The notes below the pieces were generated by a model. The model saw nothing but the letters and a program-made list of their open reading frames with translations, was not told the origin of the DNA and ran no database searches. DNA of 64,000 nt from Octopus sinensis (taxonomy: Eukaryota). This document shows, piece after piece, positions 21,101 through 55,600 of the stretch (the first letter of the stretch is position 1; each line of letters begins with the position of its first letter). A program made the translations under genes and the position numbers. The stretch is taken from positions 2,728,001-2,792,000 of the forward strand of contig NC_043021.1 in the NCBI RefSeq assembly GCF_006345805.1, written 5' to 3'.

Positions 21101-24100
21101 GTCAGTATGGAAAATTCGTTTAACCGAAACCTAGGTAGCAAATTCCTGTTGAGAAGATAGCATAATGCACCCTTTATTCCTTCGGAATGAAAATATGCTG
21201 TCTTCGAAACATGTGTCAAGAGTAAAGGAATTTTGTTAACATCTTCGTTCGACTCCATTCTTTCATTTATTTATATATATATAAATATCTCGAAGTGAAT
21301 TATTGTGAACTCTTGTAAATAGATATGGTTAGTGGAAACTGAAAGAAGCCCATTGCGTGTGTGTCTGTGTTTTGATGTCTTTACAGTATAGATACAAATA
21401 AACAAGCGTTGCTGTCATACAAGTGAAATCCTTTTTCTGGAAACATTTCTGGTCATGGGGGTGGATATGACCTTCCTTTGAAAATTGGTGAAGGTTGGCA
21501 TCAGGTCTCAGAAAATCTGCCTGCCTTAGTGAATTTCATCTGACCCATGCAAGCATAGTAAAATGGACGTTAAAACACGTGATGATGATGGTATTTTTAT
21601 TGCAAGGCGGTGAGCTTGCGGAAACATTAACACGCCGGGCAAAATGCTAAGCAGTATTTCGTGTGCCGCTACGTTCTGAGTTCAAAATCTGCCAAGGTCG
21701 ACTTTGCCTTTCATCCTTTCGGGGTCGATTAAATAAGTACCAGTTATGCACTGGGGTCGACGTAATCGACTTAATCCGTTTGTCTGTCTTTGTCCCCTAT
21801 GTGTGTAGCCCCTTGTGGGCAGTAAAGAAATAAGAATCGTTAGCACGCGGGGCGAAATGCTAAGCAGTATTTCGTGTGCCGCTACGTTCTGAGTTCAAAT
21901 TCTGCCATGGTCGACTTTGCCTTTCATCTTTTCGGGGTCGATTAAATGAGTACCAGTTACGCACTGGGGTCGATATAATCGACTTAATCCGTTTGTCCTC
22001 TCTGTGCTTAGCCCCTTGTGGGTAGTAAAGAAATAAGAATCGTTAGCACGTGGGGTGAAATGCTTAGCAGTATTTCGTCTGCCCTTACGTTCTGAGTTCA
22101 AGTTCTGCCGTGGTCAACTTTGCCTTTCATCCTTTCGGGGTCGATTAAATAAGTACCAGTTACGCACTGGGGTCGATGTAATCGACTCAATCCGTTTGTC
22201 TGTCTTTGTTTGTCCTCTCTGTGTTTAGCCCCTTGTGGGTAATAAAGAAATCGGTATTTTTATTGCAAGGTGTTATGCTGGCGACTCAGCTGAACCCCAT
22301 GATGGAAGATGGTTCTCTAGACAATCTGTCGGTTATCAAGCTGAACAAGTTCTTATGTAACATCATTCAAAATGACAAGTAAGTAAACGATTGTCACAGT
22401 TTTTGAGAATGCAAAGGTTTTGTTTTTCAATGTCCCCCTTGCTTACAGTTTGCTCCTTTGCTTTCTACTTTGTCCTCGTTTTTTTATACCAAAACAGAGG
22501 CGCAATGGCCCAGCTGAGAAGCGGCGGCGCTTCCGCTTTTATTCCAAAGTATAAAAGGAATATTTCTAGAGATATACGTGCATAGTTTGGTTGGTGTGGA
22601 GGCGCAATGGCCTAGTGGTCGTAGGATCGTGGTTTCGATTCCCAGACCGGGCGTTGTGAGTGTTTATTGAGCGAAAGCACCTAAAGCTCCACGAGGCTCC
22701 GGCAGGGGATGGTGGTGATCCCTGCTGTACTCTTTCACCACAACTTTCTCTCACTCTTACTTCCTGTTTCTGTTGTACCTGTATTTCAAAAGGGCCGGCC
22801 TTGTCACTCTCTGTGTCACACTGAATATCCCCGAGAACTACGTTAAGGGTACACGTGTCTGTGGAGTGCTCAGCCACTTACGCGTTAATTTCACGAGCCG
22901 GCTGTTCCGTTGATCGGATTAACCGGAGCCCTCGTCATCGTAACCGACGGAGTGCTTCTATGATACCAAAACATCCACCATTATTACTGATGGCACAAAT
23001 ACTCCAGTCCAAAAGAAGAAAAGAAGTTCTTCCTGTCTTGCATTGAGAAAGGTTACCTTTGTCCTTTGCCATATTTTCCTCAATGCACTCCAGCTTAGAT
23101 TTCTTTTCAAACAACAGATCTTTTTCGTCGTTTTGATCTTTTAAAAGTTTGTCACTTGCAACCTGCCCAGTCTTCTTTCTCACACTTATCAGTCAATGAT
23201 TGTGCCGGTGGCACGTAAAAAGCACCATCCGATTGTGGCCGTTGCCAGTCTTGTCTGGCACCTGTGCAGGTGGCACATAAAAAGCACCCACTACACTCAC
23301 GGAGTGGTTGGCGTTAGGAATGGCATCCAGCTGTAGAAACATTGTTAGATCAGACTGGGCCTGGTGCGGCCTTCTGGCTTCCCAGACCCCAGCTGCACCG
23401 TCCAACCCATGCCAGCATGGAAAGCGGACGCTAAACAATGATGATGATGATTGATACTTTGAAAACAAAATCCCTGTTGTATTTGCCAACATTACAAGCA
23501 TTAACAACTGCTCGGTAGGAATATGAACTGATTCTTATCTCTAAGAAGCCTCTCTTGAGAAGCAAATGCTGTCTTACCTGGAATGAATGCTTCAAGTCCT
23601 GAGTATTCTACCCCTTTCGCAGACGGTCATCTTCTGATGACTGCCACAAGTGTTGTCAAGAGGAAAAAAACTTTTGTAAGAATAGCCACAGGTGTGGTTG
23701 CATGGTTAAGAAACTTGGTTCCCGATCACATGGTTTTGGGTTCAGTCCCACTGTGTGGCACCTCAGGCAGGTGTCTTCTACTATAGCCCCAGGTCGACCA
23801 AAGCCTTGTGAGTTGATTTTGTGTGTGTTTGTATGTCATGGTATCTCTGAGTCTCTTGACATAACGTGACAGTCGTAAACAAGTGTCACCGTCATACAAG
23901 CAGTGTCCTTCATCTCCAGTCTTTCACCAAAAAACATATCTGACCCTGGGGGAAACATCTTACTTGGAAACAAATAACAAATGAGGGTTGGCAACAGGAA
24001 GGGCATCTGGCCACAGAAGATTCTGTCCGACCCATGCAAGCATAAGAAAGTGGATGTTAAAATGATGGTAATGAAAATATTTTATTTTATTTTGCAACAG

Positions 24101-24748: not shown

Positions 24749-27700
24749 CTTGTTGCATTTGATTACAAAGAAGTTTTATTTGAAACGTTTTGACTTTGAT
24801 TTTCTCTCTTTCAGCTGCACCTGCTGCTGCTGAGAACAACACAAACAGTGAGTATTTTCTTTTAAGTATTTGTTTTTCTTGTAGAGAACGTCACAAACCT
24901 TGCTTCATCTGAGATATATCCATCAATGAGTGATTAAAACTTATCAACTGTGACCAAAGAGATTATCCACCGTCCACACAAATTAGACTGATTTGAGTTC
25001 TTTTCGTACTTTCTTACCACCTGCCACTGAGAACTGAACCGAAATTCCTTCAAATGTGATGTTGGTTCCTGCAATAAGGAATTTTAGCAATCACTTCTTC
25101 GATTAACTAATCCTAAATAATCTTCCCAAAATTAATCTATTTTGATTAGATTACATGACAAACATTGAGCTTTTCTCTTCATCGTTAGAAAGAATTCAAT
25201 TATAGGCACTTGTTGATTCTTTTGTGGACACCCAAATATACCGCATTTTCTAGAATACCAGTTGAATTTTTCAAACCAAAATTTACAGCCCCTAAAATCC
25301 AAAGGTAGAATACTTGACATGTCTAAAGAAAATGTAGATTCATGTCCAACAGGGCAGCCTTTGACTTTTCCTTTCCAAAAGGGATTTTTAACCCAATATT
25401 TATTCAGTATTCTTTATTGCTTTATCTGCTTCAAAAAAAAAAAAAAAAAAAGAAGAATTTCACATTTTCTTGAAGTTTGTAGAATTTCTGTAATGTCAGC
25501 AAAAAAGGTAGGTTGACTTCTTACACCAAGACAACTTTGGAGGATCAAAAATTCCATATCAAATTCTAGGATTTGGAAGGATAATGACAGCATTTGAACA
25601 TTTACACTATCATACTATGTAAGCATCACCTCTTAAGAAATTAATTGCAAGAATTATGTTCCCAGTTATAAATTCTTAGTAGTGCTAACCTATTAATATT
25701 CAAATTATTCTGTAAAGTGTTACCTCGTTATTGTATTCAGTTTGCAAGATTTAATGAGTTGGCCCAACACCTACAGCTCTCACACAACTGGTTGGCAAAA
25801 GTTGTACTTTTACATGTCTCTGTGTTTCTCTTTGCCATTATAAACTTCTTGGCTTCTTTCCACATTTAAACCTTTCTTTATAATTTGAATTTTCTTGTTT
25901 ATCAGGTCTTCCTGCACCTTCCAAGCCTCCGTCTGTTCCCATACCAAACAGTGAGTTACATGTTTCCTTTCTGACAATTCCTTTCATTATTAAACCTCCG
26001 CCTTAGCGAAGGCATTGTTTTCAGTTGTGTTTGTTTGTCTGTGGACAAGATTATCTCAAGAATTGCTGGATAGATTGGATGAAACGTTCAGGGATGTTTG
26101 GCCTTGTGACTGGCACAAACTGATTAGATTTTGGGATCGATCTGGTAACAGACAAGGATTCTGGATTATTTTTCCCCCTTTTTTTTTTCCATTTCACTAC
26201 TTAATCTTTGAGAGCGGTCAGGTTCATTTTTAGTATTCTCGTTTGTGAGAGTAGTCGAGTTTATTTCAAATATTCTCAATTTAAAAATCATCTCCCAGGG
26301 GCATCCTGTTTTGAATTCCTCTGTGTTCAAATTCCACCAAGGTTGACTTTGCCTTTCATAGTTTCAGGATCCATAGAATACGTACCAGTTGTGCACTGGG
26401 GTCAATGTAATCTACTAATCCCTTCCCACAATGTTGCTGGCCCTGTGACAAAATTTGTAATCATTTTGTTATTATTAAGGCAGCGAGCTGGCAGAATCGT
26501 TAGCACACCATGGAAAATGCGTTGTGGCATTCCATCCATTCTTATTTTGCAAGTTCAAATTCTGCCGAGGTTGATGTTTGCCTGTCATTCTTCCGGGGTC
26601 AATAAAATAAGTACCAGTGGAGTACTGGGGTCAATGTAATCGACTTGCTCCCAAAATTCCTAGCCTTGTACCACCTCTTTTAATACTAGTCCCTCCTCAG
26701 TTGAGGGATCTTTGTTTTGCAAGTTACTTGGGACTATCTTGGTGCTTTTGCCATGTAAAAAGTCCCTATACCCTCTCTCTCTCTTTCGGAGAGGCACTGA
26801 GCAGCTATACGCACACATACACACACGGCAGTAACTTCCACCTACCGATTCAATCAAAGCTTCGGTCGACTCGAGGCTATAGCAGAAGACACCTACCCAA
26901 AGTGCCACGCAGTGGGACTGAACCCGAAACCATGTAGTTGGGAAGCAAGCTCCCTAACCACACAGCCATGCCCGATGGTTGGCATTAGGGAGGCGATCCA
27001 ATCCTAGAAACCAAGCCAAAGTAGACAGCAGAACTTGGTGTGGTCCTGTAGCTCACCAGCTCTTACCAAATCGCCCAACCCATGCCAGCATAGAAAACAG
27101 ACATTTTCAATAGTGATAGTGGTAATGATGATATTTCATTTCCTTTGGTTCTAGGGACACCTTTAGGTAGTGGCCCTGTCGTTAATAATAAACCACCTGG
27201 TCTTCCTACAACTCCAGGAGGAACTGGCAGAATTCATGCCATCGCAGGACTCTCGCTCTACCAAAATAGGTAAGTTGCCTTTTTGTTCTCCTGTTTTTAG
27301 CTTGAATGAATTGGAGTCTTTGAGAATCTAAGCATTGACATGTTTTGAACTTAGTGGAACGTCCGTTCAGATAAATATATTACAGTCAGCAGTCAATGGC
27401 AGCACAACTAGCAATGAGTCTGCGAGTCGCCCTGGGAGGCATGGGATGGAAATGCAAAGGAAGCGTGTCGCAGGACCCTAAAGTGGGTCCAGGAACGAAC
27501 GAACAACTGTTAACGATGGTGAAAGTGTAATGATGGTTGCTTCTAATAGGACCCCGAGGAGGAGGTGCCCACAGGGTCTATTCCCCACACCACCCACAAG
27601 TCTCCCTGGAATGGTGGGCAGAGGAGATGGTCAGGTGGAATGGCATTTCATTGAATCATCCTGTAGCATTCGTTGCATGCAAAAGAGAAGAATTAACCAT

Positions 27701-30700
27701 GGTTCATTGGTCTTGGAATATTCAACCTGTCAGAAGTATTTGGTGATGGCATTGATAAAGGATTGCAGAGTTTCTTCCTTATTTCAAATTGTTACTTACA
27801 TCACATCACCTGAGTGCTTTGCTCCAGTCTGGCCAATACTCCATGAGTGAATTCAAAAGATGGAAACTGTGGAAGACCATTGTATATATGTATTAATGTG
27901 TCTGTGTCTCCCACCACCACTGTTTGGTAACCAGTGTTGGTTTGTTTATATCCCCATAACTTAGCTGTTTGGCAAAAGAGACCAATAAAATAATTATGCA
28001 GTGGCTTCTATATAATAGCAGAATGAATACCAGACATCAAAATATAAAAAAAAAGAAAAAGTATTGGAGTTGATTTGTTCAATGTAAGCAGTCTGAGGTG
28101 GTGCTCCAGCATGACCACAATCCAATGGCTGAAACAATTGAAATACATATATTTCACTGTATCGACTAGACAATCAATGTTATACACCACTGATCACAGT
28201 GCACTTCCTTGCGTTGTTGTAGCTTTTGAATGATGCCACCCTGCTGGTTTGCCTGGCAGTCCCCCCCCCCTCATCGCAGGGTAGGGTTACCACCCATTTA
28301 CAGTTAAGTGGGCTAAAAATAACAAGGAAAGAAGTGTTTTGCACAAGTCCGGGAATCGAAACCGTGATTTCGCAATTGTGAGTGCAACACCCTAACCTCA
28401 AGACCACAAACCTTCACACACACACATTGTACACTACCGTCAGAAATTAATTAGCACCCTTGATTTGCTCTTCACTCAAGGTATGTGCTGTCACCTAGTG
28501 GCCATATCTCGAACTATTGCTTTGTTGCGAGTTCACTGTTGCGCAGAACGATGACGTAACTTTGTTTGCAGAGCAGTTTGAGAGTCTACAGCCTTATGAT
28601 GTTGACATAGCAGTGCAACAACAACTTGGAGTGCGGATGCAGACAAATCTTCCTTTCTTTAATAGATATAGGTAGCGCTTCGCAAGGACCGAAATCACAC
28701 CATACTAAGTTTTCTCATCGCGTAAGACGTTTTGAACAGCTCATAGGTTAATTGATTTAACCTATTTAATGTAGAAATTTGAGAAGTGCTAATTAATTTC
28801 TGACGCAAGTGTATATGCCTTAACTTTATTGTTTTCAACAGATGGAAGATTTGTGCGCGAGTGACCCATAAATCTGCTGTGAGGAACTGGAGTAACTCTC
28901 GTGGGGAGGGCAAGCTGTTCAGTGTTACGTTCCTCGATGACAGCGGTGAAATCCGGGCCACAGGATTTAATGATGCAGTTGACAAGTTCTTTGAATTTCT
29001 TCAAGTTAACAAGGTAAGTTTCACCTTCGTTTTGTTATACCTGTATCATCATCATCATCATCATCATCGTTTAACGTCCGCTTTCCATGCTAGCATGGGT
29101 TGGACGGGTCAACTGGGGTCTGTGAAGCTGGAAGGCTTCGTCAGGCCCAGTCAGATCTGGCAGTGTTTCTACGGCTGGATGCCCTTCCTAACGCCAACCA
29201 CTCCGCGAGTGTAGTGGGTGTTTTTTACGTGCCACCTGCACAGGTGCCAGACAGAGCTGGCAAACGGCCACGAACGGATGGTGCTTTTACGTGCCACCGA
29301 CATGGGGCCAGACAGAGCTGGCAAACGGACACGAACAGACGCTGCTTTTACGTGTCACCGGCACGGGGGCCAGCCGAGGCTGGCAACGAACACGAACGGA
29401 TGGTGCTTTTACGTGCCACCGACACGGTTGCCAGACAGAGCTGGGTAAATTAACTGAGTCCTGTTAATTTAATTAACTCAGCCACCATACTCTGTACCCT
29501 TGACTTCATTGTGACACCTCTTACTGTAAAAGGTTCAGAAAAGGTACAATACAGACAAGAAAGTGATATTTTGAATTTTGAACGCAGAATCAGTGTTAAA
29601 ATAGCAGAAAGATTGGGTGTTAATACTCTTACATCATCATCATCATCATCGTTTAACGTCCGTTTTCCGTGCTAGCACGGGTTGGATGGTTCGACCGGAG
29701 TCTGGGAAACCAGGAGGTTGCACCAGGCTCCAGTCTGATCTGGCAGTGTTTCTACAGCTGGATGCCCTTCCTAACGCCAACAACTCCAAGAGTGTAGTGG
29801 GTGCTTTTTTACATGCCAGGGGAGTCTGGCAACGGCCACGATCGGTTGGTGCTTTTAACGTGCCACCGGCACGGAAGCCAGCCAAGGCGGCGCTGGCATG
29901 AAAAGTTGTTAACAAACAGCCATGATACACATTCAACTGGCTCCTGTGCCGGTGGCACATAAAAGGCACCGTTCAAACATGGTTGATGCCAGTCCCACCT
30001 GACTGGTTCCCGTGCTGGTGGCACATAAAAAGCACCCACTACACTCTGGGAGTGGTTGGCATTAGGAAAGGCATCCAGCTGTAGAGTCCTTGCCAGATCA
30101 GATTGGAACCTGGTGCAGCCTTCTGGCTTTGCCAGTCCCCAGTCAAACCATCCAACCCATGCCAGCATGGGAAAACGGATGCTAAACGATGATGATGTCT
30201 ATTTATTAGTGGAGTCTCATGTAAATTAATTTTTTGTTTTAATCTTGGAATTAAATGGTTTTGATTAACTGTCAGGTGACTTTTGGCCAACCCTGTATCC
30301 ATACAACGGTTGTTTAGAGATGAGTTTTAAAGTTGACTCCTTCTTAACATTCAGTGTCCACTTTTCCATGTTTGCAGGGGTCACTTGGAATTTAAGGCAG
30401 TGCTCCAGCATGGCTACAGTCAATGTAATTTAAAGCAACCCAAACATGGGGTTTCTTTTCTTTCTTTTTTTCTTTAACCTATTCCGTTTTTCTTTGTTAT
30501 TTCAGGCTTATTACGTGAGTAGAGCCACTCTAAAGATGGCAAACAAGAAATTTAGTTCTGTGCAGAATGACTTTGAGATGACTTTCAACTCTGACACAGT
30601 CATTGAGTTGTGCACAGAGAACACAAATTTGCCCACCATCACATATGATTTTAAGCCATTGAAAGACCTGGGCCAAATTGAACCTAACACTATTATTGGT

Positions 30701-33700
30701 GAGTGAATCTTTTCTCTGTTTCTAAACTACTTGTACTAATTGTGACGACATTCACCCTAGGCAGGTTGAGTCGGCTTCTTCTACTCGTGGAAGAAGTTTC
30801 GTGGGAATATGTGGATTTCACAAGCGGTCCCCAACAATCCTGCATGTAGAGACATCCTGTTTGCCGCAGATTGTCCGCAGACGCAGGGACAGAACGACCA
30901 AGGAGCCGCCGTTTGCCGAAACAGACACTCCGAGGATTTTCACCAGAACCCTGTCTGCTGGGTTGTGGCCCTAATACCACTCGGTGTTAGACCAATCCGC
31001 CTTGGGTGGCCCTACCAGGAACCGAAGTTCACGACGGCATAGCTCTGACACTACCCGTTGCCAGCGTCCCCACCACGGTGAGGAGGGGATGGACTTGGGG
31101 GACACAAACAGACACTCCGAGGATTTTCACCAGAACCCTGTCTGCCGGGTTGTGGCCCTAATACCACTCAGTGTCAGACCAATCCGCCTTGGGTGGCCCT
31201 ACCAGGAACCGACGTTCCCGATGGCATAGCTCTGAAACTACCCGTTGCCAGCGTCCCCACCACGGTGAGGAGGGGATGGACTATGGGGGACGCTCTGTTT
31301 CTAAAAACTGTGTTTTCCAGTTGATGTATATTGTGTAACCATGCAGTGTAAACGTTCAAATATTGACAATATCTTTCCAATTCCTGATGTATTTCACAAG
31401 GAATATTCAGTCCTCCAAAGTCATTTTCGTTTATAAGTCAACCTACCATTTTTGGCAATAAATTTTGGTCTAAGAAATTCAACTTAGATTCTGGAAAATA
31501 TGGCACTGCTGCATTTTAACCCTGTAAATGTCTAACTCATCCAGTCTCTTCTTGTTTTTCTTTTCCACTTATTTGATGCTTCTTCAATTAAATTTCACAC
31601 TAGCTTATCCTTTCACTATCATATTTGTTAAAATACTCTGCAATTATTGCAAATAACTTTAAAACAACAAGGAATTTTGTAAAATAACTTTGTGGTTATT
31701 TTACTCTGGAGTTTTGAATATAAAAAGCACCCACTACACTCTTGGAGTGATTGGCATTAGTAAGGTTATCCAGCTGTAGAGACCTTGCCAGATCAGATCA
31801 GATTAAACCGTCCAACACATGCCAGCATAGAAAGCGGATTTTAAACGATAATAATGATGATTAACCCTTTCGTTACCAACCCGGCCAAAACCGGCTCTGG
31901 CTCTAGTATAAATGTCTTGTTTTCATAAGTTTTTCATTAAAATCTTCCACCAAACCTTAGTCACAATTTATGATCCTAACACTAGCTTAATGATAACCAA
32001 GTTATTTTACTAAATTCTTTGTTATCATCATCATCGTTTAACGTCCGTTCTCCATGCTAGCATGGGTTGGACGGTTCGACCGGGGATCTGGGAAGCCAGA
32101 AGGCTGCACCAGGCTCCAGTCTTATCTGGCAATGTTTCTACAGCTGGATGCCCTTCCTAACGCCAACCACTCCGTGAGTGTAGTGGGTGCTTTTTACGTG
32201 CCACCTGCACAGGTGCCAGGCGAGGCTGGCAACGGCCACGGTCGGATTGGTGTATTTTATGTGCCACCGGCACGGAAGCCGGTCGAGGCGGCACTGGCAT
32301 CGGCCACGAGTCAAAATAATTGAAAGAAGCACAGAACATCTCAAAATGAATACGGTAATGAAAGGGTTAACTCTGGCATCCTGATTACTCTGTCAAATTT
32401 CACTGTTTTCAATTACTCATGTATTAACTCATAGCTTTTGAAGTATTGATGATGTAACTGCTTAGAATGACAGTGTAGAGTAGGTGTGAGAGGTCAGATC
32501 TGGCTGGTTTGACCCGTAGAATATTCAGGACAAATATTGTGTTAGCACGCCGGGCGAAATGCTTAGCGGTATTTTGTCTGCCGTTGCGTTGTGAGTTCAA
32601 ATTCTGCCGAGGTCGACTTTGCCTTTCATCCTTTCAGGGTCGATAAATTAAGTACCAGTTACACACCGGGGTCGACGTAATCGACTTAATACCTATGTCT
32701 GTCCTTGTTTAGCCCCTTGTGGGTAATAAAGAAATAGGTATTTCGTCTGCCGTTGCGTTGTGAGTTCAAATTCTGCCGAGGCCGACTTTGCCTTTCATCC
32801 CTTCGGGGTCGATAAATTAAGTACCAGTTACACATTGGGGTCGATGCGATCGACTTAATACCTACGTCTGTCCTTGTTTGTCCCCTCTGTGTTTAGCCCC
32901 TTGTGGGTAATAAAGAAATAGGTATTTCATCTGCTGTTGCGTTGTGAGTTCAAATTCTGCCAAGGTCGACTTTGCCTTTCATCCTTTCGGGGTCGATAAA
33001 TTAAGTACCAGTTACGCACTGGGGGTCGACGTAATCGACTTAATACCTATGTCTGTCCTTGTTTGTCCCCTCTGTGTTTAGCTCCTTGTGGGTAATAAAG
33101 AAATAGGTATCAAAAGGGTCACGGTATCTGGCTTGGTGCTTTGTAACATGTCATTCGAAATGGGTTTTTTTTTGGTGGAATTATGATAATAAAACAAAGT
33201 TCCATAGACGTTATTGCATCAAGTTTGAGGCAACGATTTATAAAGGGACTAGCAGTATCACCCGGCGTTGCTCGGGTTTGTAAGGGAAATAACTATATAA
33301 GCATTTTTAGAGATGTAAAGTATAATAGCCATCTCAATATGGTTAACCACATTTTGGTTGTTACTGTAGCTTTTTACGTTCTGAGATTTAATAATAAATT
33401 TTTAGAGTTACTTCTCTTATATATGCCAAAAATGCATTAAAAATGGGAAAAATTGATGGTAAATTTTTTTTTAAATCGTAGACTCATCGTAGACGCGCAC
33501 TAATACCCAGAAGGGCTCGATATGAATCACGACTATAAGATACCCGGTTTTGGTTAAACTGCACCGCAAAGTGTGGGAGTAGTTAGGAATCTAAATCGTA
33601 GGAGACAGACACTCACACAACCTCACTTTTATATATAAAGATATGACGAAAATTTTTCTTTTAACTATGTTTTCTCATCATTTGCAGACGTAATTGGTGT

Positions 33701-36700: not shown

Positions 36701-39340
36701 CCTGATCTGGGGATTGAACTTGCTACCTCATGATTGTGAGCCCGACATGCTAACCACTGAGTCATATGAATGTGTGTGTGTGTATATATGCATGTACACA
36801 TACATGTACAAAGGGCTTCCAGAGTTTGCGTTTATCTAATTCCTCCCAAATGTTTATTGTTGCCTTTTTTTAGGAATTGCTTTTTGTCACCAATGAATAT
36901 AATTATTTTTATTTCTCTTCTTCAGGTCGCACCTTGTCTTTATTATCAAGCGGACAAATGATTCTAAACCCCGACATAAGGGAAGCCCATTTCCTTCGTG
37001 GCTGGTATGATCGAGATGGTTGTAATATGGAATTTAACACTTTTCAGGGTGATTCAGCTAGTATTAGAGGAGGTATTGTACATCTCTCTCTCACTTTCTC
37101 TCCCTCTCTTCCTCCTCTAAACCCCCCCTCTTTATCCCAACAACTTTGCTTTCAAGTCCACATAGTTTTACAAAATGGAACCTGTTGAAGTAGGCTGGAG
37201 ATTGTCATCAAACGAAACATTTGAAGGGCTGGCGTCGTATCCAGGGGAGACATGTCTCTCATCTTTACTTCACGTCTTAAAAAAATATGCCGTTGTCTCA
37301 CTGTGACAAGACCAGCTGTGATACTCCAAACTGCATCTCATTTAAGTGGATTCTCTTCATAATCAATTAGGCTTAGAATCTTTTCTTTATCCTCATCATC
37401 ATCACCATCATCATTCGACACTCGCCTTCCATGTGGCATAAGTTGGAAAGCTCCAGTTGTCTTCTATGGCTGAATGCTCTAGCATTTGTTAGCCCTCTCT
37501 CTCTTTCGGAGAGGCACTGAGCACATACACGCACACATACACACACGGCAGTAACTTCCACCTACCGAATTCAATCACAAAGCTCCGGTCGGCTCGGGGC
37601 TATAGCGGAAGACACCTACCCAAAGTGCCAAGCAGTGGGACTGAACCCGAAACCATGTAGCTAGGAAGCAAGCTCCCTAACCACACAGCCATATTGCTAT
37701 CTCCTCAACTCTAATTGGACTCAATACTGGCTCAACTCTGACCTGCAGCACACACATAACTATAACACAATCACACACACTACATAAGCTTTATTACTTT
37801 CTGTTGTTGCCAGCGCCGCCCCGACTGGCCTCCGTGCCGGTGGAATGTGAAAGGCACCCGCTCTACACTGTCGGAGTGGTTTGCGTTAGGAAGGGCATCC
37901 AGCCGTAGAAACATTGCCAGATCAGACTGGGCCTGGTGCAGCCTCCTGGCTTCCCAGACCCCAGTTGAATCGTCCAACCCATGCCAGCATGGAAAGCGGA
38001 CGTTAAATGACTAAACTATGTTACAAAGTTTGCCAATACATCAAGACAAAACTGATATGGCTTGGTTCATGGCTGAAAAAAACAACTCTAAAAAAATGAA
38101 TTCATCAACCGAATTTCATCATCATCATCATCATCATCATCATCGTTTAGCGTCCGCTTTCCATGCTAGCATGGGTTGGACGGTTCTACTGGGGTCTGTG
38201 AAGCCAGAAGGCTGCACCAGGCCCCAGTCTTATCTGGCAGTGTTTCTACAGCTGGATGCCCTTCCTTAACGCCAACCACTCCGTGAGTGTAGTGGGTGCT
38301 TTTTACGTGCCACCGGCACTGGTGCTAGACAGAGCTGGCAAACGGCCACGAACGGATGGTGCTTTTTATGTGCCACCGGCACGAGGGCCAGGCGAGGCTG
38401 GCAACGGACACGAAACGGGGCGGTGCTGGCAACGGTCGCGAAACGGAAAGTTGTTTGAAATAATTGTTTTTTGATGATGAAGATGACACTGTTAACAAAG
38501 ATGTATTTAATTCCTCTTTTATTTTCATTTCATTTAGGCAATGAGTGGAAGACATTTGAACAAGTTAAATCTGAAAAGTTAGGAGCAACAAAACCTGATT
38601 ACTTCACCTCAAAGGGAACTGTGATTTTCATAAAGAAAGGAAACTGCATGTATATGGTAGGTACAACATCAGCTTACGGTGGTTCTAACTTGTTTTGCTC
38701 TCTTTAAATACTCCAACTTCTGCAGTTATATTCTGCCAAATTTACCTATTTCTTTATTGCCCACAAGGGGCTAAACATAGAGAGGACAAACAAGGACAAG
38801 CAAACGGATTATATCGACGCCAGTGTGTAACTGGTACTTATTTAATCGACCCCGAAAGGATGAAAGGCAAAGTTGACCTCGGTGGAATTTGAATTCAGAA
38901 CGCAGCGGCGGACGAAATACCACAAAGCATTTCGCCCGGCGTGCTAACGATTCTGCCAGCTCGCCACCTTCTGCCAAAGATTACCATCATCATCATCATC
39001 AAGTCTGTTTTTCCATGCTTTTATGGATAAGACTATACAGTTGGTGCCCCAGCATGGCCACAGCTCATAAGCTGAAACTAGAATCAATCAATCAATCAAG
39101 TCGATTTGAAAGAAGATAAAAGTGACATATAGTGCTTGCTCTTTTACTTGTTTCAGTCATTTGTCTGCGGCCATGCCTGAGCACCGCCTTTAGTCAAAGC
39201 AAATCGACCCCGGGACTTATTCTTTGTAAGCCCAGTACTTATTCTATCGGTCTCTTTTGCCGAACCGCTAAGTGACGGGGACGTAAACACACCAGCATCG
39301 GTTGTCAAGCAATGCTAGGGGGACAAACACAGACATATAT

Positions 39341-39377
<37 letters not shown>

Positions 39378-42300
39378 CATATATACGACAGGCTTCTTTC
39401 AGTTTCCATCTACCAAATCCACTCACAAGGCATTGGTCAGCCCGGGGCTATAGTAGAAGACACTTGCCCAAGATGCCACGCAGTGGGACTGAACCCGGAA
39501 CCATGTGGTTGGTAAGCAAGCTACTTACCACACAGCCACTCCTAGATGTAATTTATATAAGACAAATTCACGGCTTCATACCTGATGCATGTCTGCTGTT
39601 ACAATATTACATTTGCATGCACAAAATCATACATTTTCCACTATAAAACAACTTTAAAATATTTTTCAGTAAGTGTATGATGAAACAGAATACATTTGTT
39701 CTTTCTTCAAAGTATCCTCATACAATTGGGATGCATCTGATACACTGGCAAATATGGTAATTGCATTCTGGCATTTAATTTCAGTTTCCTTCTTCATCAT
39801 TTAACATCCGCTTTCATGCTGGCATATGTTTGAGAGTTTGCCTGAGGACTGGCAAGCCAGGAGACTGCATCAGGTTCCAACCTGACCTGGCAAGGTTTCT
39901 ACAGCTAGATGCCCTTCCTAATGCCAACCACCCCAAAAGTATAGTGGGTGCTTTTTATGTGCTACTGGCACAGAAGCCAGTCAGGCAGCACTGGCATTGA
40001 CCAAGCTCATGTGGTGCTTTTTATGTGGCTCTGGTATCGACCACGCTCAAATGATGCTTTTTACGTGTCACTGGCATGCATATTTTCCAGCATACAGGTT
40101 GACATATCGTGTAAATGTGAAGTGGAAACATTTAAACGTTTTTGTCTTTCCGAATCCTGCTGCCTTTCACATTGACAATTTGGTCCTCCAAAGTCATTGT
40201 GGTGCGTCAGTCAGCCTACCTCCTTGTAGCTGTGAATTTTGGTCTGAAAAATTTTAACTTGTATATCCCAAAATCATCATCATCGTCGTTTAACGTCCGC
40301 TTTCCATGCTAGCGTGGGTTGGATGGTTTGACTGGGGTCTGGGAAGCCAGGAGGCTGCACCAGGCTCCAGCCTGATCTGGCAGTGTTTCTACGGCTGGAT
40401 GCCCTTCCTTAACGCCAACCACTCCGTGAGTGTAGTGGATGCTTTTTACGTTCCACCGGCACAGGTGCCAGGCGAGGCTGGCAACGGTCAGGATCGGTTG
40501 GTGCTTTCTATGTGCCACCGGCATGGAGGCCAGTCGAGGCAGCGCTGGCAACGGCCACGTTCTGATGGTGCTTTTACATGCCACTGGCACTATGGTACAT
40601 ATTTGAATTGTGCCAATAGTTTTCATTTTTGTTTGATGAAGTGACACAATGTAATTAACTCCCTCTAAAACCTCCCTGTTTCTTGTGTTGTTAGGCTTGT
40701 CCCAATGAAAATTGTAACAAGAAACTGATAGACCAGGGAAATAACCAATACCGATGTGAGAAGTGTGATCAAGAGTTCCCTAACTTCAAATGGCGATTGC
40801 TTTTGTTGGTAAGTTAAATATATTTTAGTTAACCCTTTTGTTACCATCCCACCTAAAATTGAACCTGGATTTGCGATACAAATTCCTGTTTTAACCCTTT
40901 AGCATTCAAGCCGGCCATTTCCGGCCGAAATATTTAACCGGTTTTTAGTTGAAACTGACCTCTCACACCAACCCTACAATGACATTCTAAAACTAAACCA
41001 TCTCATTACTGAAATCTCTAAACTACAACATAATTAATTCTAAATAACGAAAGTAAACAAATATTACTTTTGACATAGTAATAATCATCTGAATATTTAA
41101 ATGGTTAAAGTGATCGAAATTAAAACTTCGGATCTTTTCTGTTTGAACGGCAGTTTTTAACATAATTTCTAGGTAACTAAAAAATTTTAAATTTCGTATA
41201 CTGGCAGAATGTGTTTATAAAACATCTTTTTCTCTTGGCTTTATTGAGAAAATTCTATAGTTTGTAAGATATTTGCTGTTTTTTTTCTTCAATTTCTGCA
41301 ATTTCAACCAATCAATGATGTGTGTTGAGGTAAAAAAACATTCTGTGCAGTATGAAAATGTCCCTCGTTTAAGAAACAGATTGGGTTTATTTACATTTGT
41401 GAAGAAAAAAAGATACCCTTCCCCCTAACCCTAAAACAGATTGAAATGCAATAGATCGATACTAGGGTCATAATTATGAGTGACAATTTCATATGGCACT
41501 GCTAGAAAAAACTGCCGTTCAAACCGAAAAGATCCAAAACTTCCTATCAATATTTTGCGTTAATTTATGTTTCAAAGACCAGTTTTAGAATGACCATTAT
41601 TTTTCTAAATTCTTCATTGTTCTCAGAACAAGTCGATATATTTCACTAGAAATATGGTAACAAAAGGATTAATGAAATCTAATTGATGATACTTCTTTTA
41701 AAATTTCACTCAAGCCTTTACTAACGAATACATATATATCCATTTCCATTTCCTCTCGCAGACCAACATTGCTGATTATACAGGCAGCCAATGGGTTACA
41801 TGCTTCCAAGATTCTGCAGAATCCCTTCTTGGAGTCTCAGCTGATGAGCTGGGCAACTTAAAGGAAATGGTGAGGCATATTCTTTTTCTTTTCTTTTACT
41901 TGTTTCAGACTGCGGCCATGCTGGAGCACCGCCTTTAATCGAGCAACTCGACCCTGGGACTTATTCTTTTGTAAGCCCGGTACTTATTCTATCGGTCTCT
42001 TTTGTTGAACCGCTAAGTAACGGGGACATAAACACACCAGCATTGGTTGTCAAGCAATGCTAGGGGGACAAACACACACACACGCATACATATTTATACA
42101 TATATACAACGGGCTTCTTTCAGTTTCCATCTACCAAATCCACTCACAAGGCTTTGGTCGGCCCGAGGCTATAGTAGAAGACACTTGCCCAAGGTGCCTC
42201 GCAGTGGGACTGAACCCGGAACCATGTGGTTGGTAAACAAGCTACTTACCACACAGCCACTCCTGCGCCTATATATTGCTTTCTCTATTCACTTCATCAT

Positions 42301-47204: not shown

Positions 47205-48919
47205 GTGTAACGTTTAGGGTTTCAGATATTGTGAAACAAGTTTACTAATGAAAATATTTTAATTCCATTCTAACAATTCAAAATTTGCCATTTTATGTTC
47301 CACTCTGAAGCAGCACAAAGTTTCATTCAATTATTTTTAAGCTTCCTCATCAGACAACAATAATTTGCCACACGACAGAATCGTCTCTCAGGAATATTTA
47401 CCGTTCTACATGCACTCTTTTGGGATTCGTTATTAATCACAATGACCACAACTTAATAATGTCCACTTCTTCATACTTGCATGGATCAGACAAAATGTGT
47501 CAAACAAACCATTTTACCAATCCTATTATGCTTGGCCCACTTTAAGTGAAGTTTGACAATTTCAAATTGAGACGACCAATCATTTTTTTAGCTCCCTAAT
47601 GCTCTGCATCTCCTCCAAGTTGTTTTTACACTTCATTAATCATCATTATCGTTTAACGTCCATTTTCCATGCTAGCATGGGTTGGACGGTTCGACCGGGG
47701 TCTGGGAAGCCAGGAGGCTGCACCAGGCTCCAACCTGATCTGGCAGTGTTTCTACAGCTGGATGCCCTTCCTAACGCCAACCACTCTGAGTATAGTGGGT
47801 GCTTTTTACGTGCCACCAGCACAGGTGCCAGGTGAGGCTGGCAACGGCCACGATCGGTTGGTGGTTTTTACGTGCCACCAACACGGAAGCCAGTCGAAGC
47901 GGTGCTGGCATCGGCCACGTATGGATGGTGCTTTTTAGGTGCCGATCATCTTGATTTAATCCCTGTAGCAACTTAAATCCACTGTTTATACAGTTAATCT
48001 ATTCAGCAGTGAAGCATTCACTAACTCACAGCCATCTTTGTTTTGATTCACTTCACTGCATCAATAAAACAACTGAAAAGCATTGGAATCAAAATTTCAA
48101 ATATTTATGGTGTTTACTGATGGAAAGGATACTGGTTGTACTGGGACAGGAATTCAAAGAGATTTAAAAAAAAAAAAAAATTGTCAGAGGTAAGAAAACT
48201 AAATTCTATAATTTTCGAGAATATCCTTCCCTGCTTGAAACATTACACCATGGGACACACAAACATCTTAGTTTATGAATTTTTCTTTTGAATCTTTTCA
48301 AATTATTAGACCCTGTGCTAAATGCATGGATCGTTATCAGTTTCCTTGGAATCAGAAAAAAAAAATTTTTTTTTTTTCTGTTAAACCATCATCCAGTGCC
48401 AACCAAGTTTCAAAAACATCAAATCTCTCGACAAAAAAACAAATTTCTTGCAAACCAATGTTTTTTGCTAGTTTCATCTCTCAACTGTTTGTCTCCGACA
48501 GTTTTCATTTTCTAGAAAATCTTGTGTATTAACCAAGTGAAATTTCGTCATAGAAGACCGTAACCCATGCAGAAACAAAGTAGTTTAAATTACAAACACT
48601 GAACAAGTCATTCACTCTGTTGGTCATTTCCCCTTGACTTGTGTCCGAGACCATTGGGACGTATTAAAATTCTTTAAAACCAAATCTATCCTCACAATGT
48701 AAATACCGGAGGCATTGACTGGGAGAAAGAATTTGAATTTAAGGAGGGTTTTTTTTGTTTTCTTCTTTTTATCCCCCAAAACAATAAACACTTATTTCTA
48801 TAAATCTATTTATGTCTCTAGCAGAGAATTCATTAATACAAATATTAATTGGCAGAAGATCAGGGAATGAATAAATTATCAGAAAAAAATATGAATCATT
48901 CAAAATGGCTTCTCAATTA

Positions 48920-52631: not shown

Positions 52632-55600
52632 TCATGGGAGTTGTGTGGGTTCAAGGAAATTTGCATCAATGGGTGAATCAGTGTTGTATAACAATGATGG
52701 AGACGGTAATGAATTAATCTGTGGCTGCTCAGGAAGGGATTCCTGAGGTGGGGGTGGTGGTTGTTGTTGTTGTTGTTCTGTGAGAGAAACAAGTGCTACC
52801 TGTGCTGACACCTGGGATTGGATAGGGACAAGAGGAGGAGGTAACTTGTGAGTTTCCTCGCTGACTTCATCGATTTCGACTTTGACCTTACGCGGTTTGA
52901 TGGTCAGTGGGTTTCGTTCGAGAACATTCTGGATTTCCTGTTTGAAGTTCTCCTTGAACTCTTCGACGTCTCTCTGCAGTTGCATGGCTTCGGCCATCAC
53001 CTTGTCGTGCCGCTTCTGCATCTCGGTCAACCTCTGCAGGTTCTCGTACATCAAGCGCATGCCTTCGCACATGTATTCGTTGCCACGCGAGGGAGGAGTC
53101 GCTTCTCCGGACATGTAGCGTTCAAACTCCACCTGGTTCAAACTAAGTGAGTCGGCAGCAATGTTCTCAATGAATGCCACAGCACAACACTGGCAATAAA
53201 CAAAACACAAGTGTTAATATCTACACGAAAAACAGAGACACAAACAAACAATTGGATTTAATTATTATAATAATAATCCTTTCAACTAAAGGCACAAAGC
53301 CTGCAAATGGTTTTGTTTTACTGTCAGCTACTTTTAGCCAACCCTGTGTGTGTGTGTGTGTGTGTGTATACCCATGGAAAGCGGACATTAAATGATGATG
53401 ATGATATATATATATATATATGTGTGTGTGTATGTATGTATGAAAGAGAGACATACCTAATTACAGAGAAGATTTTCTAACTAGAAAGTATATGGCCTGG
53501 TCAGCCTGTAATGACATGCATAAGATCTGGTCATCAAATCTAAGTAGAGACTTCAAACTTGAAATCTTCAAAGCCACAGTCGAACCAATTCTACTATATG
53601 GCTCAGAAACCTGGACGTTATCAAAGAAGCTTGAGAGGCAGTTTAGATGGAACCTACACTCGCCTCCTTATGAGAGCTCAAAATCTCTCGTGGAGGCGCC
53701 ATCCAACTAAAATGCAAATATATGGGAAATTACCACCTGTGTCATCTCTTGTGAAAGGTAGGAGAGTCCAGTTTGCTGGACATTGTTGTAGAGCTGAAAA
53801 AGAAGTAATTTCTACTCTTCTCCTCCGGAAGCCATCTACTCGCAACACCAGAGGGCGCACACTCTCCTACCCTGATGTAATCTCCAGGGATACAGGCATC
53901 CAGCAACAGGACCTCCGTAATGCTATGATGGACCGTGAAGTCTGGCGTAGCATGGTAAATTCCATTGTCTCGACCACGGTCGAACAATGATGACGATGAC
54001 AGAGAATTATCAAAGCAAACACAGATTAATTGTTAACCGTTTAGCATTTAAACTGGCCATATCTGGCCCAAATATTGTTTTATGTTAAAGTATATTTCTT
54101 TACTAACACCGAGAGGACAGACAAATGGATTAAGTCGACTACATCGACCACAGTGCATAACTGATACTTAATTTATCGACCCCGAAAGGATGAAAGGCAA
54201 AGTCGACCTCGGCAGAATTTGAACTTGGAACGTAACGACAGACGAAATACGCCCGGCGTGCTAACGTTTCTGCCAGCTCGCCGGGCAAGGTCTGGCCTCT
54301 CACCCCTATCCTTCAGTGTCATTCTAAAAACAAACAATCACATCACTGAAGTCTCAAAGCTACAAGACAATGCACGATTAATTCAAAACTATGAATAGAG
54401 AAGCATCACATTTGACAAATGCATTGAGTGTACAGGTGGAAGTGGAGAGTATGTAGACCAAAGAAATCTCTATCAGCACAATGCTAAACGGTTAAAAAAG
54501 GTTGTTACATGGAAACCCAGATACTTACAAGGTTGGTGAAATAATAGCCAGCCTCACCACTCATAAGGCGGCTGGGGTTGGAAAACCGGGTGATGTACTG
54601 GATATTGGACTGGAGTAAAGGCGGGTTAGCCTTTAGGACAATGTAAATTAGAGCAGGCAGGAATTCATCGGCGCTGGCTGGACTGTCTTTCGATGCACGC
54701 AACACTTCAAATATATGTTTGCTGCATTTCACCAAACATGCTAATTTGTCTTGCGGTGCACGTTTCGAATTCATTTCAATAATATCTGCAATATCAGCAA
54801 ATTATTTGTTCAATTAAATTAGCATCGTTGATAAAATATAATCAGAAATAGCTAATTTAGCTCTTAGATTACTTGTTATATATAAAAAAACAGGATTTAA
54901 AAAGGGCAAGAATAATCCGGAGAGTATTCTTGCACATGTGGCTGTGTGGTCAAGTACTTTGCTTCAAAACCACTTGGTTCTGGGTTCAGTACCATGGCAT
55001 GGCACCTTGGGCAGGTATCTTCTATTATAGCCCTGTGATAACCAAATCCTGTGAGAGGATTTGGCAAACAGAAACTGAAAGAAGCTCATTACATATGTGT
55101 GTATATATACCCGTGCACGTGTGTGTTTGTCCTTCTGATAGTTGTAAACAAGTATCCCTGTCATATAAGATGTGTTGTTTGTTTACAATTTTCCATTGAA
55201 ACATGTCCAGCCACATGGAAACATTATCTTGCCTTGAAAAAAGGTGAGGTTTGGTGATAGGAAAGGCATCCAGCCATAGAAAATCTACTTCGACATATTC
55301 CAGCTGTGTACAGAAAAGGGGGGATGTTGAAATCATCGTCGTTTAGCGTCCGCTTTCCATGCTAGCATGGGTTGGACGGTTCAACTAGGGTCTGGGAAAC
55401 CAGAAGGCTGCGCCAGGCCCAGTCTGATCTGGCAGGGTTTCTACAGCTGGATGCCCTTCCTAACGCCAACCACTCCAAAAGTGTAGTGGGTGGGTGCTTT
55501 TTACGTGCCACCTGCACAGGAGCCAGACGAGGCTGGCAACAGCCACAATCGGATGGTGATGAAAGAAAGAGACTGAGGGAGAGTTATTTAACCTGCTAGA

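What the first reader, a model, noticed from the sequence alone, without database searches (positions are those of the whole stretch)
30714..31305. TSD-flanked non-autonomous retroelement headed by two tandem candidate HDV-like ribozymes
Seen: a 566-bp GC-rich insert 28 nt into RPA1 intron 10, flanked by CTCTGTTTCTAAA at 30714-30726 and 31293-31305. On the minus strand it starts with two ~188-nt units. Each unit can be folded by hand onto the HDV double pseudoknot: P1 GCGUCCC/GGGACGC (copy B GUGUCCC, wobble-preserving) and a 7-nt L3 UCACCGU with the conserved U, C and G. P1.1 is CA/UG, a compensatory version of the canonical CC/GG. This is followed by GCAAC, a branched P4 (cUUCGg tetraloop in copy B) and J4/2 GGCGGA versus GGCGAA in HDV. 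The predicted cleavage G1 of copy A (31293) falls on the element's 5' boundary, within 1 nt of TSD ambiguity. The 3' part has a stem-loop, an AGTACAAGTAG end and a degenerate ...NLRQT...W..LVKST reading like an RTE ORF2 terminus. Established: HDV-like ribozymes process the 5' ends of RTE and R2 non-LTR retrotransposons. Inference: this is a ribozyme-headed, Pol-III-independent SINE-like RTE parasite. Two active copies would also excise a ~188-nt RNA. It is antisense to RPA1, so it would not cut the pre-mRNA. Weakness: P2 and P3 each contain a U-U mismatch and the A77 position is G.
Basis: partly seen in the sequence, partly recalled or inferred. Interest (0 to 1): 0.85.

Follow-up and report, generated by a model that had tools for sequence, protein, structure and literature searches.

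The report
Octopus retroelement with HDV-like ribozyme head
A 566-bp non-coding jumping element sits in an intron of the octopus RPA1 gene, and its first ~120 bases fit the fold of a hepatitis-delta-type self-cutting RNA, a known way for such elements to trim their own 5' end that has not been proven here.

Summary
The window is Octopus sinensis CM016883.1. A 566-bp GC-rich insert (30727-31292, sense on the minus strand) lies 28 nt into an RPA1 intron and is flanked by a perfect 13-nt duplication.

O. bimaculoides has the empty site. O. vulgaris has the same insertion with only one 187-nt head unit. So this is a true retroposition, and the "two tandem ribozymes" are specific to O. sinensis.

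The head fits a published HDV-ribozyme descriptor: G1-C, a 7-bp P1, L3 UCACCGU, P1.1 C-G/A-U and J4/2 CGGA. G1 falls on the element's first base. A descriptor just loose enough to admit it hits ~6e-7 of positions in random sequence. In about 146 kb of real octopod sequence, both strands (about 290 kb scanned), it hits only these copies.

The fold fails the strict descriptor because P2 and P3 each carry a U-U and a 4-nt spacer separates them. It scores 11.5 bits against Rfam's threshold of 44. No covariation is available, because only three near-identical copies could be reached.

The 3' modules, including a stem-loop kept by compensatory changes, recur in other Argonauta non-autonomous elements. 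An RTE origin is not supported.

Verdict: a probable new member of a known kind, a ribozyme-headed non-autonomous non-LTR element.

The parts
30714..30726 (.). Target-site duplication, copy next to the element's 3' end (CTCTGTTTCTAAA on +)
   Evidence: Exact 13-nt direct repeat. O. bimaculoides has a single copy at the empty site.
31293..31305 (.). Target-site duplication, copy next to the element's 5' end. Base 31293 (G on the minus strand) is ambiguous between the TSD and element nucleotide G1.
   Evidence: Unit B carries the equivalent G at 31105.
30727..31292 (-). Whole 566-bp non-autonomous, non-coding retroelement
   Evidence: Absent in O. bimaculoides (L006), present in O. vulgaris (L001). 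No TIR, no Pfam domain, no tRNA.
31106..31293 (-). Head unit A (188 nt counting G31293)
   Evidence: TRF and alignment.
30919..31105 (-). Head unit B (187 nt). Its last ~26 nt already belong to central module 1.
31175..31293 (-). Candidate HDV-like ribozyme A, in 5'-to-3' order on the minus strand: P1 (7 bp, 5' strand 31287-31293, 3' strand 31251-31257); J1/2; P2 5' strand AGUCCA (31277-31282); 4-nt spacer; P3 (4 positions with a U-U); L3 UCACCGU; P1.1; P4 (~54 nt, branched); J4/2 CGGA with C31186; P2 3' strand UGGUCU
   Evidence: Descriptor scan hit at G1 = 31293. Pair table. Rfam RF02682 alignment starts at 31293.
30988..31105 (-). Candidate HDV-like ribozyme B (P1 GUGUCCC with G-U; cUUCGg loop in P4; candidate catalytic C30999)
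   Evidence: Descriptor scan hit at 31105. Pair table.
30848..30956 (-). Central module 1 (AAAATCC..GGTCGT..CTGCGTCTGCGGA..). It is shared with (TGA)n-tailed non-autonomous elements in Argonauta hians.
   Evidence: blastn and nhmmer hits in L002: 1355-1456, 11909-12006, 12323-12405, 14250-14356, 17615-17800.
30727..30847 (-). 3' module 2 (GGGGACCGCTTGTGAA..CATATTCCC..stem-loop..CTCAACC..GGTGAATG..AGTACAAGTAG). This is the presumed recognition tail for the partner reverse transcriptase.
   Evidence: Shared with Argonauta copies b and f, which have different upstream bodies.
30775..30796 (-). 3' stem-loop CUUCUUC-CACGAGUA-GAAGAAG
   Evidence: Inverted repeat I3. The same hairpin with different inner pairs occurs in Argonauta b (CUUCUAGC/GCUGGAAG) and f (CUUCACC/GGUGGAG).

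Best explanation
This is a fossil copy of a short, non-coding, non-LTR (target-primed) retroelement built from three modules.

- A ~160-nt 5' head folds as an HDV-like double-pseudoknot self-cleaving ribozyme.
- A central module is shared with other octopod non-autonomous elements.
- A 3' module carries a conserved stem-loop.

Proposed mechanism:
1. The element has no recognisable Pol III promoter, so it is transcribed as part of a longer read-through or host transcript (inferred).
2. The ribozyme cuts immediately 5' of G1, which defines the RNA's 5' end (inferred from the fold and from the element beginning at that base).
3. The reverse transcriptase of a still unidentified partner LINE recognises the 3' stem-loop module. 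It copies the RNA into a nicked target, producing the 13-bp duplication. The insertion and duplication are shown; the partner is inferred.

The copy entered the RPA1 intron, antisense, after the O. bimaculoides split and before the O. sinensis / O. vulgaris split, and it has since drifted neutrally.

The head is duplicated only in O. sinensis. The duplicated block starts exactly at the element's first nucleotide. That fits a reverse-transcriptase template jump at the processed 5' end with later collapse in O. vulgaris. A later DNA-level duplication is not excluded.
For: Insertion:
- Perfect 13-nt TSD.
- Empty site in O. bimaculoides and orthologous filled site in O. vulgaris.
- No TIRs, no coding domain, no tRNA, 5S or 7SL match.

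Ribozyme:
- The head matches the published descriptor elements G1-Y, 7-bp P1, L3 U-C-N-N-C-G-N, two-pair P1.1 and J4/2 CRRA.
- The P1.1 change is two-sided relative to the canonical pair: C-G becomes A-U.
- My scanner, relaxed only enough to admit the candidate, hits G31293 and G31105 in the window, the O. vulgaris copy in L001 and nothing in L002.
- The same scanner hits 5 of 8 million positions in composition-matched random sequence. Given a P1 hairpin, the conditional rate is 3e-5.
- The hit begins at the TSD-defined 5' end.
- RF02682 aligns from G31293 in the same register. It scores 11.5 bits, the only ribozyme family among 4227 listed at E <= 10.
- P1 forms with probability 0.95-0.98 in the O. 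vulgaris copy.

Tail:
- Modules 1 and 2 recur in Argonauta elements with other heads or tails.
- The stem-loop is kept with compensatory pairs.

Precedent: ribozyme-bearing 5' ends are retained by 'bipartite' non-autonomous LINEs of RTE, Ingi and R2 (PMC5786205), by NARTc/SIDER (PMC4035085) and by R2 SIDEs (PMC3414825).
Against: - The strict literature descriptor is not met. P3 and P2 each contain a U-U. P2 and P3 are separated by 4 nt instead of being contiguous. P2 is weak at -3 kcal/mol.
- No Rfam HDV-type family comes near its threshold.
- Unit folding energies are no better than shuffles, with z = -0.52 and +1.08.
- Local hairpins CCCCUCC/GGUGGGG and GGCCA/UGGUC compete with P1 and P2. 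P1 probability is only 0.07 in unit B.
- Only three near-identical copies exist (A, B and O. vulgaris), so there is no covariation. Their differences look neutral.
- A very loose descriptor is non-specific, hitting 1.6-4.5e-4 of positions.
- No second head copy was found in the roughly 220 kb of fetched DNA, about 185 kb of it octopod.
- No partner LINE was found.
Confidence: 0.58

Rival explanations
1. The insert is a genuine non-autonomous retroelement, but its head is not a ribozyme. It would be a GC-rich structured 5' module, for example a LINE 5'-UTR or promoter monomer of the kind that often occurs as tandem repeats. On this reading the HDV-like fit comes from hand-fitting with tolerated mismatches. 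The 5' end would then be a transcription start or the end of reverse transcription.
For: - Rfam scores are far below threshold.
- Folding energies are not significant.
- P2 and P3 each carry a U-U and a non-canonical spacer separates them.
- Better local alternative hairpins exist.
- There is no covariation.
- Loose descriptors hit real sequence at chance rates, with 23 hits in the window.
Against: - Every conserved nucleotide of the published descriptor is in place, plus a two-sided P1.1 change.
- The tailored descriptor hits 6e-7 of positions, or 3e-5 given a P1 hairpin.
- The match starts exactly at the independently defined 5' end.
- The CM alignment falls in the same register.
Confidence: 0.3
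2. It is an RTE-dependent SINE-like parasite. The tail would be the degenerate end of an RTE ORF2 plus its 3' UTR, and the head would be an RTE 5' ribozyme.
For: - RTE is one of the clades known to carry 5' HDV-like ribozymes and to spawn bipartite non-autonomous derivatives.
- An RTE fragment lies in the same window at 53.5-54.0 kb.
- Central module 1 occurs in Argonauta elements that end in (TGA)n, like the local RTE.
- The frame ..GR..R.TG..M.D.W..LV.S.. loosely parallels the RTE C-terminus.
Against: - BLASTP gave E = 9.2.
- The RTE C-terminus profile finds nothing on the element or on Argonauta module 1.
- Protein database searches return no reverse transcriptase.
- The element shows no nucleotide similarity to the RTE fragment.
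- The tail ends AGTACAAGTAG with a stem-loop, not a (TGA)n-type end.
Confidence: 0.12
3. It is a conventional Pol III SINE (tRNA-, 5S- or 7SL-derived), or a DNA transposon or MITE.
For: - Its size and module sharing with an abundant octopod SINE core family resemble SINE 'jigsaw' evolution.
- A weak A-box-like AGTGG and a GGTTC..AATCC lie in the 3' half of the unit (direct reading of the sequence).
Against: - ARAGORN finds no tRNA.
- Rfam finds no tRNA, 5S or 7SL even at E <= 10.
- There are no terminal inverted repeats.
- A 13-bp TSD is atypical for cut-and-paste elements.
Confidence: 0.04

Closest known systems
HDV-like (drz) self-cleaving ribozymes at the 5' ends of non-LTR retrotransposons (R2, RTE, LOA/Baggins, L1Tc/ingi)
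   Same: - Position at the very 5' end of the element, with the cut predicted immediately 5' of G1.
- Nested double-pseudoknot order P1-P2-P3-L3-P3'-P1'-P1.1-P4-J4/2-P2'.
- A G1-Y pair.
- L3 with U, C and G in the conserved places.
- A C in a CRRA J4/2.
- A long, dispensable P4.
   Different: - P1.1 is C-G/A-U rather than two C-G pairs.
- P2 and P3 each have a U-U.
- P2 and P3 are separated by 4 nt.
- No significant Rfam score.
- Activity untested.
- The host clade (cephalopods) is, as far as my literature searches show, not reported.
Ribozyme-headed non-autonomous derivatives: NARTc/SIDER (trypanosomatids), R2 SIDEs (Drosophila) and 'bipartite non-autonomous LINEs' (Kojima 2018)
   Same: A short non-coding element that keeps a 5' ribozyme-type module and a 3' recognition module, relying on a LINE reverse transcriptase in trans. 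SIDER2 also carries two head signatures.
   Different: - The parent LINE is not identified here, so derivation by internal deletion is unproven.
- The central and 3' modules are shared with other non-autonomous elements, including one with an abundant SINE core. This points to module shuffling rather than simple deletion.
Mollusc 'jigsaw' SINE superfamilies with shared central domains
   Same: Central module 1 and tail module 2 are reused in different combinations in Octopus and Argonauta elements.
   Different: There is no Pol III-type head. The head is a candidate ribozyme.
Retrozymes (tandem hammerhead-ribozyme repeats giving circular RNAs)
   Same: In O. sinensis only, two tandem candidate ribozymes would release a ~188-nt RNA with 5'-OH and cyclic-phosphate ends.
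   Different: - A different ribozyme class.
- The tandem arrangement is a single-locus, single-species duplication.
- No LTR-like or satellite organisation.

Membership tests
HDV-like self-cleaving ribozyme | Nested double pseudoknot with P1 (7 bp), P1.1, P2, P3 and P4 in canonical order | tested here: inconclusive
   The order and all helices can be drawn, and the candidate passes a relaxed descriptor. The strict descriptor fails because of a U-U in P3, a U-U in P2 and a 4-nt P2-P3 spacer.
HDV-like self-cleaving ribozyme | G1 paired to a pyrimidine at the base of P1, at the cleavage site | tested here: met
   G1-C in A, B and the O. vulgaris copy. The descriptor allows G1-Y (PMC6326823).
HDV-like self-cleaving ribozyme | L3 with conserved U, C and G (U-C-C-N-C-G), and a two-pair P1.1 to the nucleotides 3' of P1 | tested here: met
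   L3 is UCACCGU. P1.1 is C-G plus A-U, where the canonical pair is C-G, a change on both sides.
HDV-like self-cleaving ribozyme | Catalytic C in J4/2 (CRRA) | tested here: met
   CGGA, with C at 31186 (A) and 30999 (B).
HDV-like self-cleaving ribozyme | Covariation supporting the helices across family members | tested here: inconclusive
   Only three copies 95-98% alike could be reached. The one informative change is C2-to-U2 in P1, which keeps a G-U. No other copy was found in the roughly 220 kb fetched.
HDV-like self-cleaving ribozyme | Match to a curated HDV-type covariance model at its gathering score | tested here: not met
   Best hit is RF02682 at 11.5 bits against a gathering score of 44, though in the predicted register. 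Nothing for the other HDV-type families. These models are known to miss divergent members.
HDV-like self-cleaving ribozyme | Divalent-metal-dependent self-cleavage 5' of G1 | not testable with these tools
   Needs in vitro transcription and cleavage assays.
Non-autonomous non-LTR retroelement (SIDE / bipartite non-autonomous LINE type) | Insertion with a target-site duplication, demonstrable by an empty site | tested here: met
   13-nt TSD. Empty site in O. bimaculoides and filled site in O. vulgaris.
Non-autonomous non-LTR retroelement (SIDE / bipartite non-autonomous LINE type) | No coding capacity, no LTRs or TIRs | tested here: met
   No Pfam hits on any long frame. No protein homologues. 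No terminal repeats.
Non-autonomous non-LTR retroelement (SIDE / bipartite non-autonomous LINE type) | 5' and 3' ends shared with an autonomous parent or partner LINE | tested here: inconclusive
   The 3' module is shared with other non-autonomous elements, with a covarying stem-loop. No autonomous LINE carrying it was found, and no genome-wide eukaryotic DNA search was available.
RTE-dependent element | 3' end homologous to an RTE ORF2 terminus and 3' UTR | tested here: not met
   BLASTP E = 9.2. The RTE C-terminus HMM found nothing. No nucleotide match to the RTE copy in the window.
Canonical SINE | Head derived from tRNA, 5S or 7SL with an internal Pol III promoter | tested here: not met
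   ARAGORN found none. Rfam at E <= 10 found none.

The most novel reading that the evidence does not exclude
Octopods harbour a so far undescribed class of SINE-like elements. They would replace the Pol III head with an HDV-like ribozyme, so that processing from read-through transcripts stands in for a promoter. They would exchange central and tail modules with the abundant Pol III SINEs. Where the head is tandemly repeated, as in O. sinensis, double cleavage would release a ~188-nt RNA with ligatable ends, an HDV-ribozyme analogue of retrozyme circular RNAs.
Probability: 0.1. Interest if true: 0.7.

Novelty: new member of a known kind. Interest (0 to 1): 0.42.

Why it matters
If the head cleaves, it would extend HDV-like ribozymes to cephalopod mobile elements. 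I found no report of this in the literature I could search.

It would also add a clean example of a promoter-less, ribozyme-processed non-autonomous element whose modules are swapped with ordinary SINEs. The three-species series gives a dated, well-controlled locus for testing 5'-end definition by self-cleavage:
- empty site in O. bimaculoides
- monomer in O. vulgaris
- dimer in O. sinensis

For RPA1 itself nothing is expected. The element is intronic, antisense and evolving neutrally.

Tried and rejected
Searches for further family copies:
- Protein-space searches with two element frames found nothing.
- A full HMMER scan of 1.84 billion representatives with the tail frame gave 5 hits, 4 of them tandem-repeat translations (P0001-P0004) and one a long FG-GAP-type repeat protein (P0005); none is a reverse transcriptase.
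- Exact or gapped DNA scans of JGI metagenomes (two), GTDB genomes and IMG/VR with head and tail motifs gave 0 hits.
- A covariance model of the head, run over about 180 kb (window, L001-L004), found only the three known copies. L006 was checked with nhmmer and blastn only.
- ENA contigs fetched through RTE-like proteins (L003, L004) share no repeats with Octopus and were useless.
- A literature search for the sequence strings gave 0 papers.

Other checks:
- Rfam at gathering and at permissive thresholds gave no significant family.
- The Argonauta intron is not alignable at the insertion site because of satellite sequence.
- I tried to fold the head of the Argonauta (TGA)n-tailed relative 'a' as an HDV-like ribozyme. 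Apart from a GGCGGA-like motif and a possible P2, it does not fit (hand inspection of the sequence and scanner).
- The RTE origin of the tail was rejected for lack of any significant similarity.
- I could not confirm a tRNA-type head for Argonauta copy f.
Full report
**Where the window comes from.** The window is an exact match to Octopus sinensis GCA_006345805.1, chromosome record CM016883.1, at about 2,728,001-2,792,000. RPA1 runs on the + strand, with exons from ~19.4 to 45.2 kb. The exon before the finding ends at 30698, and the insert starts 28 nt into the following intron. By my tblastn count this is intron 9 or 10.

**Checking the observation.**
- CTCTGTTTCTAAA is present at 30714-30726 and 31293-31305.
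- It brackets a 566-bp block of 55-60% GC in ~35% GC surroundings.
- On the minus strand the block opens with two tandem units (TRF: period 187, 95% identity, no indels).
- In the correct register the units are 188 nt (G31293-T31106) and 187 nt (G31105-T30919). They differ at eight substitutions and one 1-nt indel.

**It is a real insertion.** I fetched the RPA1 loci of three other octopods.
- O. bimaculoides (L006) has the empty site...gaatcttttCTCTATTTTTAAAaccgttttccag..., with one copy of the 13-nt target (11 of 13 bases identical) and no insert.
- O. vulgaris (L001) has the same insert at the same place with the same duplication (12 of 13 on one side).
- In Argonauta hians (L002) the intron is a satellite and cannot be aligned.

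The element therefore integrated after the O. bimaculoides split and before the O. sinensis / O. vulgaris split. It has no terminal inverted repeats, no tRNA, no Rfam small-RNA match, no Pfam domain in any long frame and no protein homologues. A variable-length TSD without TIRs or LTRs is the signature of target-primed reverse transcription. That last point is established knowledge of non-LTR elements, not something I tested.

**The tandem head is lineage-specific.**
- The O. vulgaris copy carries one unit, not two.
- At each of the eight sites where A and B differ, the O. vulgaris unit agrees with one of them in an interleaved pattern. It therefore looks ancestral rather than an A/B recombinant.
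- A-B divergence (8-9 differences) is about as large as either unit's divergence from O. vulgaris (6-7 differences).
- The duplicated block is exactly G31293-T31106, so its left edge is the element's first nucleotide, within the 1-nt TSD ambiguity.
- Its right edge lies inside central module 1.
- A random genomic duplication would rarely start at the element boundary. A reverse-transcriptase jump from the RNA's 5' end to an internal site of a second template, with later collapse in O. vulgaris, would explain the coincidence.
- That model would also mean unit B records an RNA 5' end at G1. This is inference, and a post-insertion duplication remains possible.

**The 3' two-thirds are shared modules.** In the 36-kb Argonauta locus, blastn and nhmmer find six partial relatives.
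- Module 1 (window 30848-30956) occurs in four Argonauta elements that continue into a different tail ending in (TGA)n.
- Module 2 (30727-30847) occurs in copy b together with module 1 and ~40 nt of the unit's 3' end. It also occurs in copy f.
- The body of copy f is the abundant octopod SINE core CTCGGGCCGACCAAAGCCTTGTG, which has 8 copies in this window against 0 expected.
- Within module 2 a hairpin is kept with different inner pairs: CUUCUUC/GAAGAAG in Octopus, CUUCUAGC/GCUGGAAG in copy b and CUUCACC/GGUGGAG in copy f.
- This is the behaviour expected of a 3' recognition stem-loop for a LINE reverse transcriptase.
- It also fixes the element's orientation as the minus strand.

**The RTE claim.** A 5'-truncated RTE copy lies at ~53.43-54.0 kb and ends in TGA/TGACGA repeats. 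The element shows no link to it.
- It has no nucleotide similarity to that copy.
- The tail frame ..[21 protein letters not shown].. aligns to the RTE C-terminus only at E = 9.2.
- A profile built from 33 RTE C-termini finds the RTE fragment at 1e-61 and nothing on the element or on Argonauta module 1.
- The full HMMER scan returns five repeat-type proteins and no reverse transcriptase.

RTE dependence is therefore unsupported, and the partner is unknown.

**What fits the HDV-like fold.** A published descriptor (PMC6326823) requires the features below, and the head supplies each of them.

| Descriptor element | In the head |
|---|---|
| P1 of 7 bp with G1-Y | GCGUCCC/GGGACGC with G1-C |
| L3 U-C-C-N-C-G | UCACCGU |
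| P1.1 of two pairs to the bases 3' of P1 | C-G and A-U; the second is changed on both sides relative to the canonical C-G |
| J4/2 CRRA | CGGA |

**What deviates from the descriptor.**
- P3 is CUCC/GGUG with a U-U.
- P2 is AGUCCA/UGGUCU with a U-U.
- Four nucleotides separate P2 from P3.
- A longer alternative pairing, AGUCCAUCC with GGAU(U)GGUCU, is possible but would consume J4/2.

**Descriptor statistics.**
- My strict scanner finds nothing anywhere.
- The scanner relaxed only as far as needed to admit the candidate finds G31293 and G31105 in the window, the O. vulgaris copy in L001 and nothing in L002.
- In 8 Mb of first-order Markov sequence with the element's composition it finds 5 start positions, a rate of 6e-7. 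With window composition the rate is 1e-7. Given a P1 hairpin, the conditional rate is 3e-5.
- A deliberately very loose scanner is non-specific, at 1.6-4.5e-4 per position with 23 hits in the window.
- The chance of a match starting at the independently defined 5' end therefore lies between about 1e-6 and 1e-3, depending on how much post-hoc freedom one grants.

**Rfam.** No family reaches its threshold. In a 125-nt search the only ribozyme family listed is HDV-F-prausnitzii (RF02682), at 11.5 bits and E = 5 over 4227 families. The alignment then loses the 3' part, because the model's P4 is 15 nt and this one is ~54 nt.

**Thermodynamics does not help.**
- Unit folding energies are no better than shuffles.
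- P1 probability is 0.95-0.98 in the O. vulgaris copy, 0.56-0.72 in A and 0.07 in B.
- P2 is worth only -3 kcal/mol.
- Local hairpins compete with P1 and P2.

**No covariation could be obtained.**
- Only three copies 95-98% alike exist in what I could reach.
- Their differences are compatible with neutral drift.
- One change, C2 to U2, keeps a P1 pair as G-U.

[quoted passage not shown] Non-autonomous derivatives that keep the ribozyme-bearing 5' end are also known.
- NARTc and SIDER; SIDER2 even carries two head signatures.
- R2 SIDEs.
- 'Bipartite non-autonomous LINEs'.

If the ribozyme is real, this element works like those. I found no report of such ribozymes in cephalopods. The module sharing with SINE-core elements is a modest twist.

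**Verdict.**
- The retroelement is certain.
- The HDV-like head is probable, about 0.6, but unproven.
- The tandem arrangement is a local accident.
- The RTE link is unsupported.
- This is a new member of a known kind and of moderate interest. It is testable by a genome-wide family alignment and a simple cleavage assay.

**Main limitation.** No tool allowed a DNA search of whole cephalopod genomes. The decisive tests, family covariation and 5'-end pile-up, could therefore not be run.

Noticed in passing
window 29100-30170, 32150-32310, 38330-38480, 40306-40650, 44423-45090, 47770-47950, 59150-59340: Many copies of a GC-rich repeat built from ~72-nt tandem subunits (GTGCTTTTTACGTGCCACCGGCACGG..GGCGAGGCTGGCAACGGCCACG). 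It shares a GCTGGCAACGG motif with the ribozyme candidate by chance. It produces long spurious ORFs.
   Followed up: partly
window 53430-54000 (+): A 5'-truncated RTE-type LINE fragment covering the C-terminal ~170 aa of ORF2, with one frameshift. It ends right after the stop codon in TGA/TGACGA repeats. Its relatives in the protein database are mostly on short ENA contigs.
   Followed up: yes
window 31195-31223 (+), and the equivalent in unit B: A weak Rfam hit to CDKN2B-AS_2 (20.6 bits, E = 0.013 in a 125-nt search), driven by a 17-nt identity GGCCCUACCAGGAACCG on the strand opposite the candidate P4. It is probably chance.
   Followed up: no
window 19769, 23788, 34275, 39424, 42145, 51675, 58142, 60994: Eight copies of the octopod SINE core CTCGGGCCGACCAAAGCCTTGTG. 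In Argonauta (L002 ~24800-25011) the same core is joined to this element's tail module 2.
   Followed up: partly
L002 1301-1478, 11882-12433, 14081-14379 (Argonauta hians RPA1 locus): Non-autonomous elements ending in GTTAAAC(TGA)n carry this element's central module 1. One has an internal ~90-nt duplication and another has a tandemly triplicated ~63-nt segment.
   Followed up: partly
L001 ~22364-22380 (O. vulgaris), equivalent to window 30735-30745: The O. vulgaris ortholog lacks 9 nt near the element's 3' end (GTCGCC---------ACAAGTAG against GTCGTCACAATTAGTACAAGTAG).
   Followed up: no
proteins P0001-P0003 (hits to window 30729-30980, minus frame): Predicted 'proteins' made of repeats NLQMVGCVFLSQNWAPLVKK resemble the frame [21 protein letters not shown] of the element's tail (E = 3.7e-13, inflated by repetition). 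Their source organism is unknown. They could be translations of a related repeat or a coincidence.
   Followed up: no
L002 17650-18010 (Argonauta RPA1 intron upstream of the orthologous exon): A long (CTACCTAC)n-type microsatellite directly precedes the 5'-truncated family copy b. The next intron, orthologous to the insertion site, is filled with a CATTC-type satellite.
   Followed up: no
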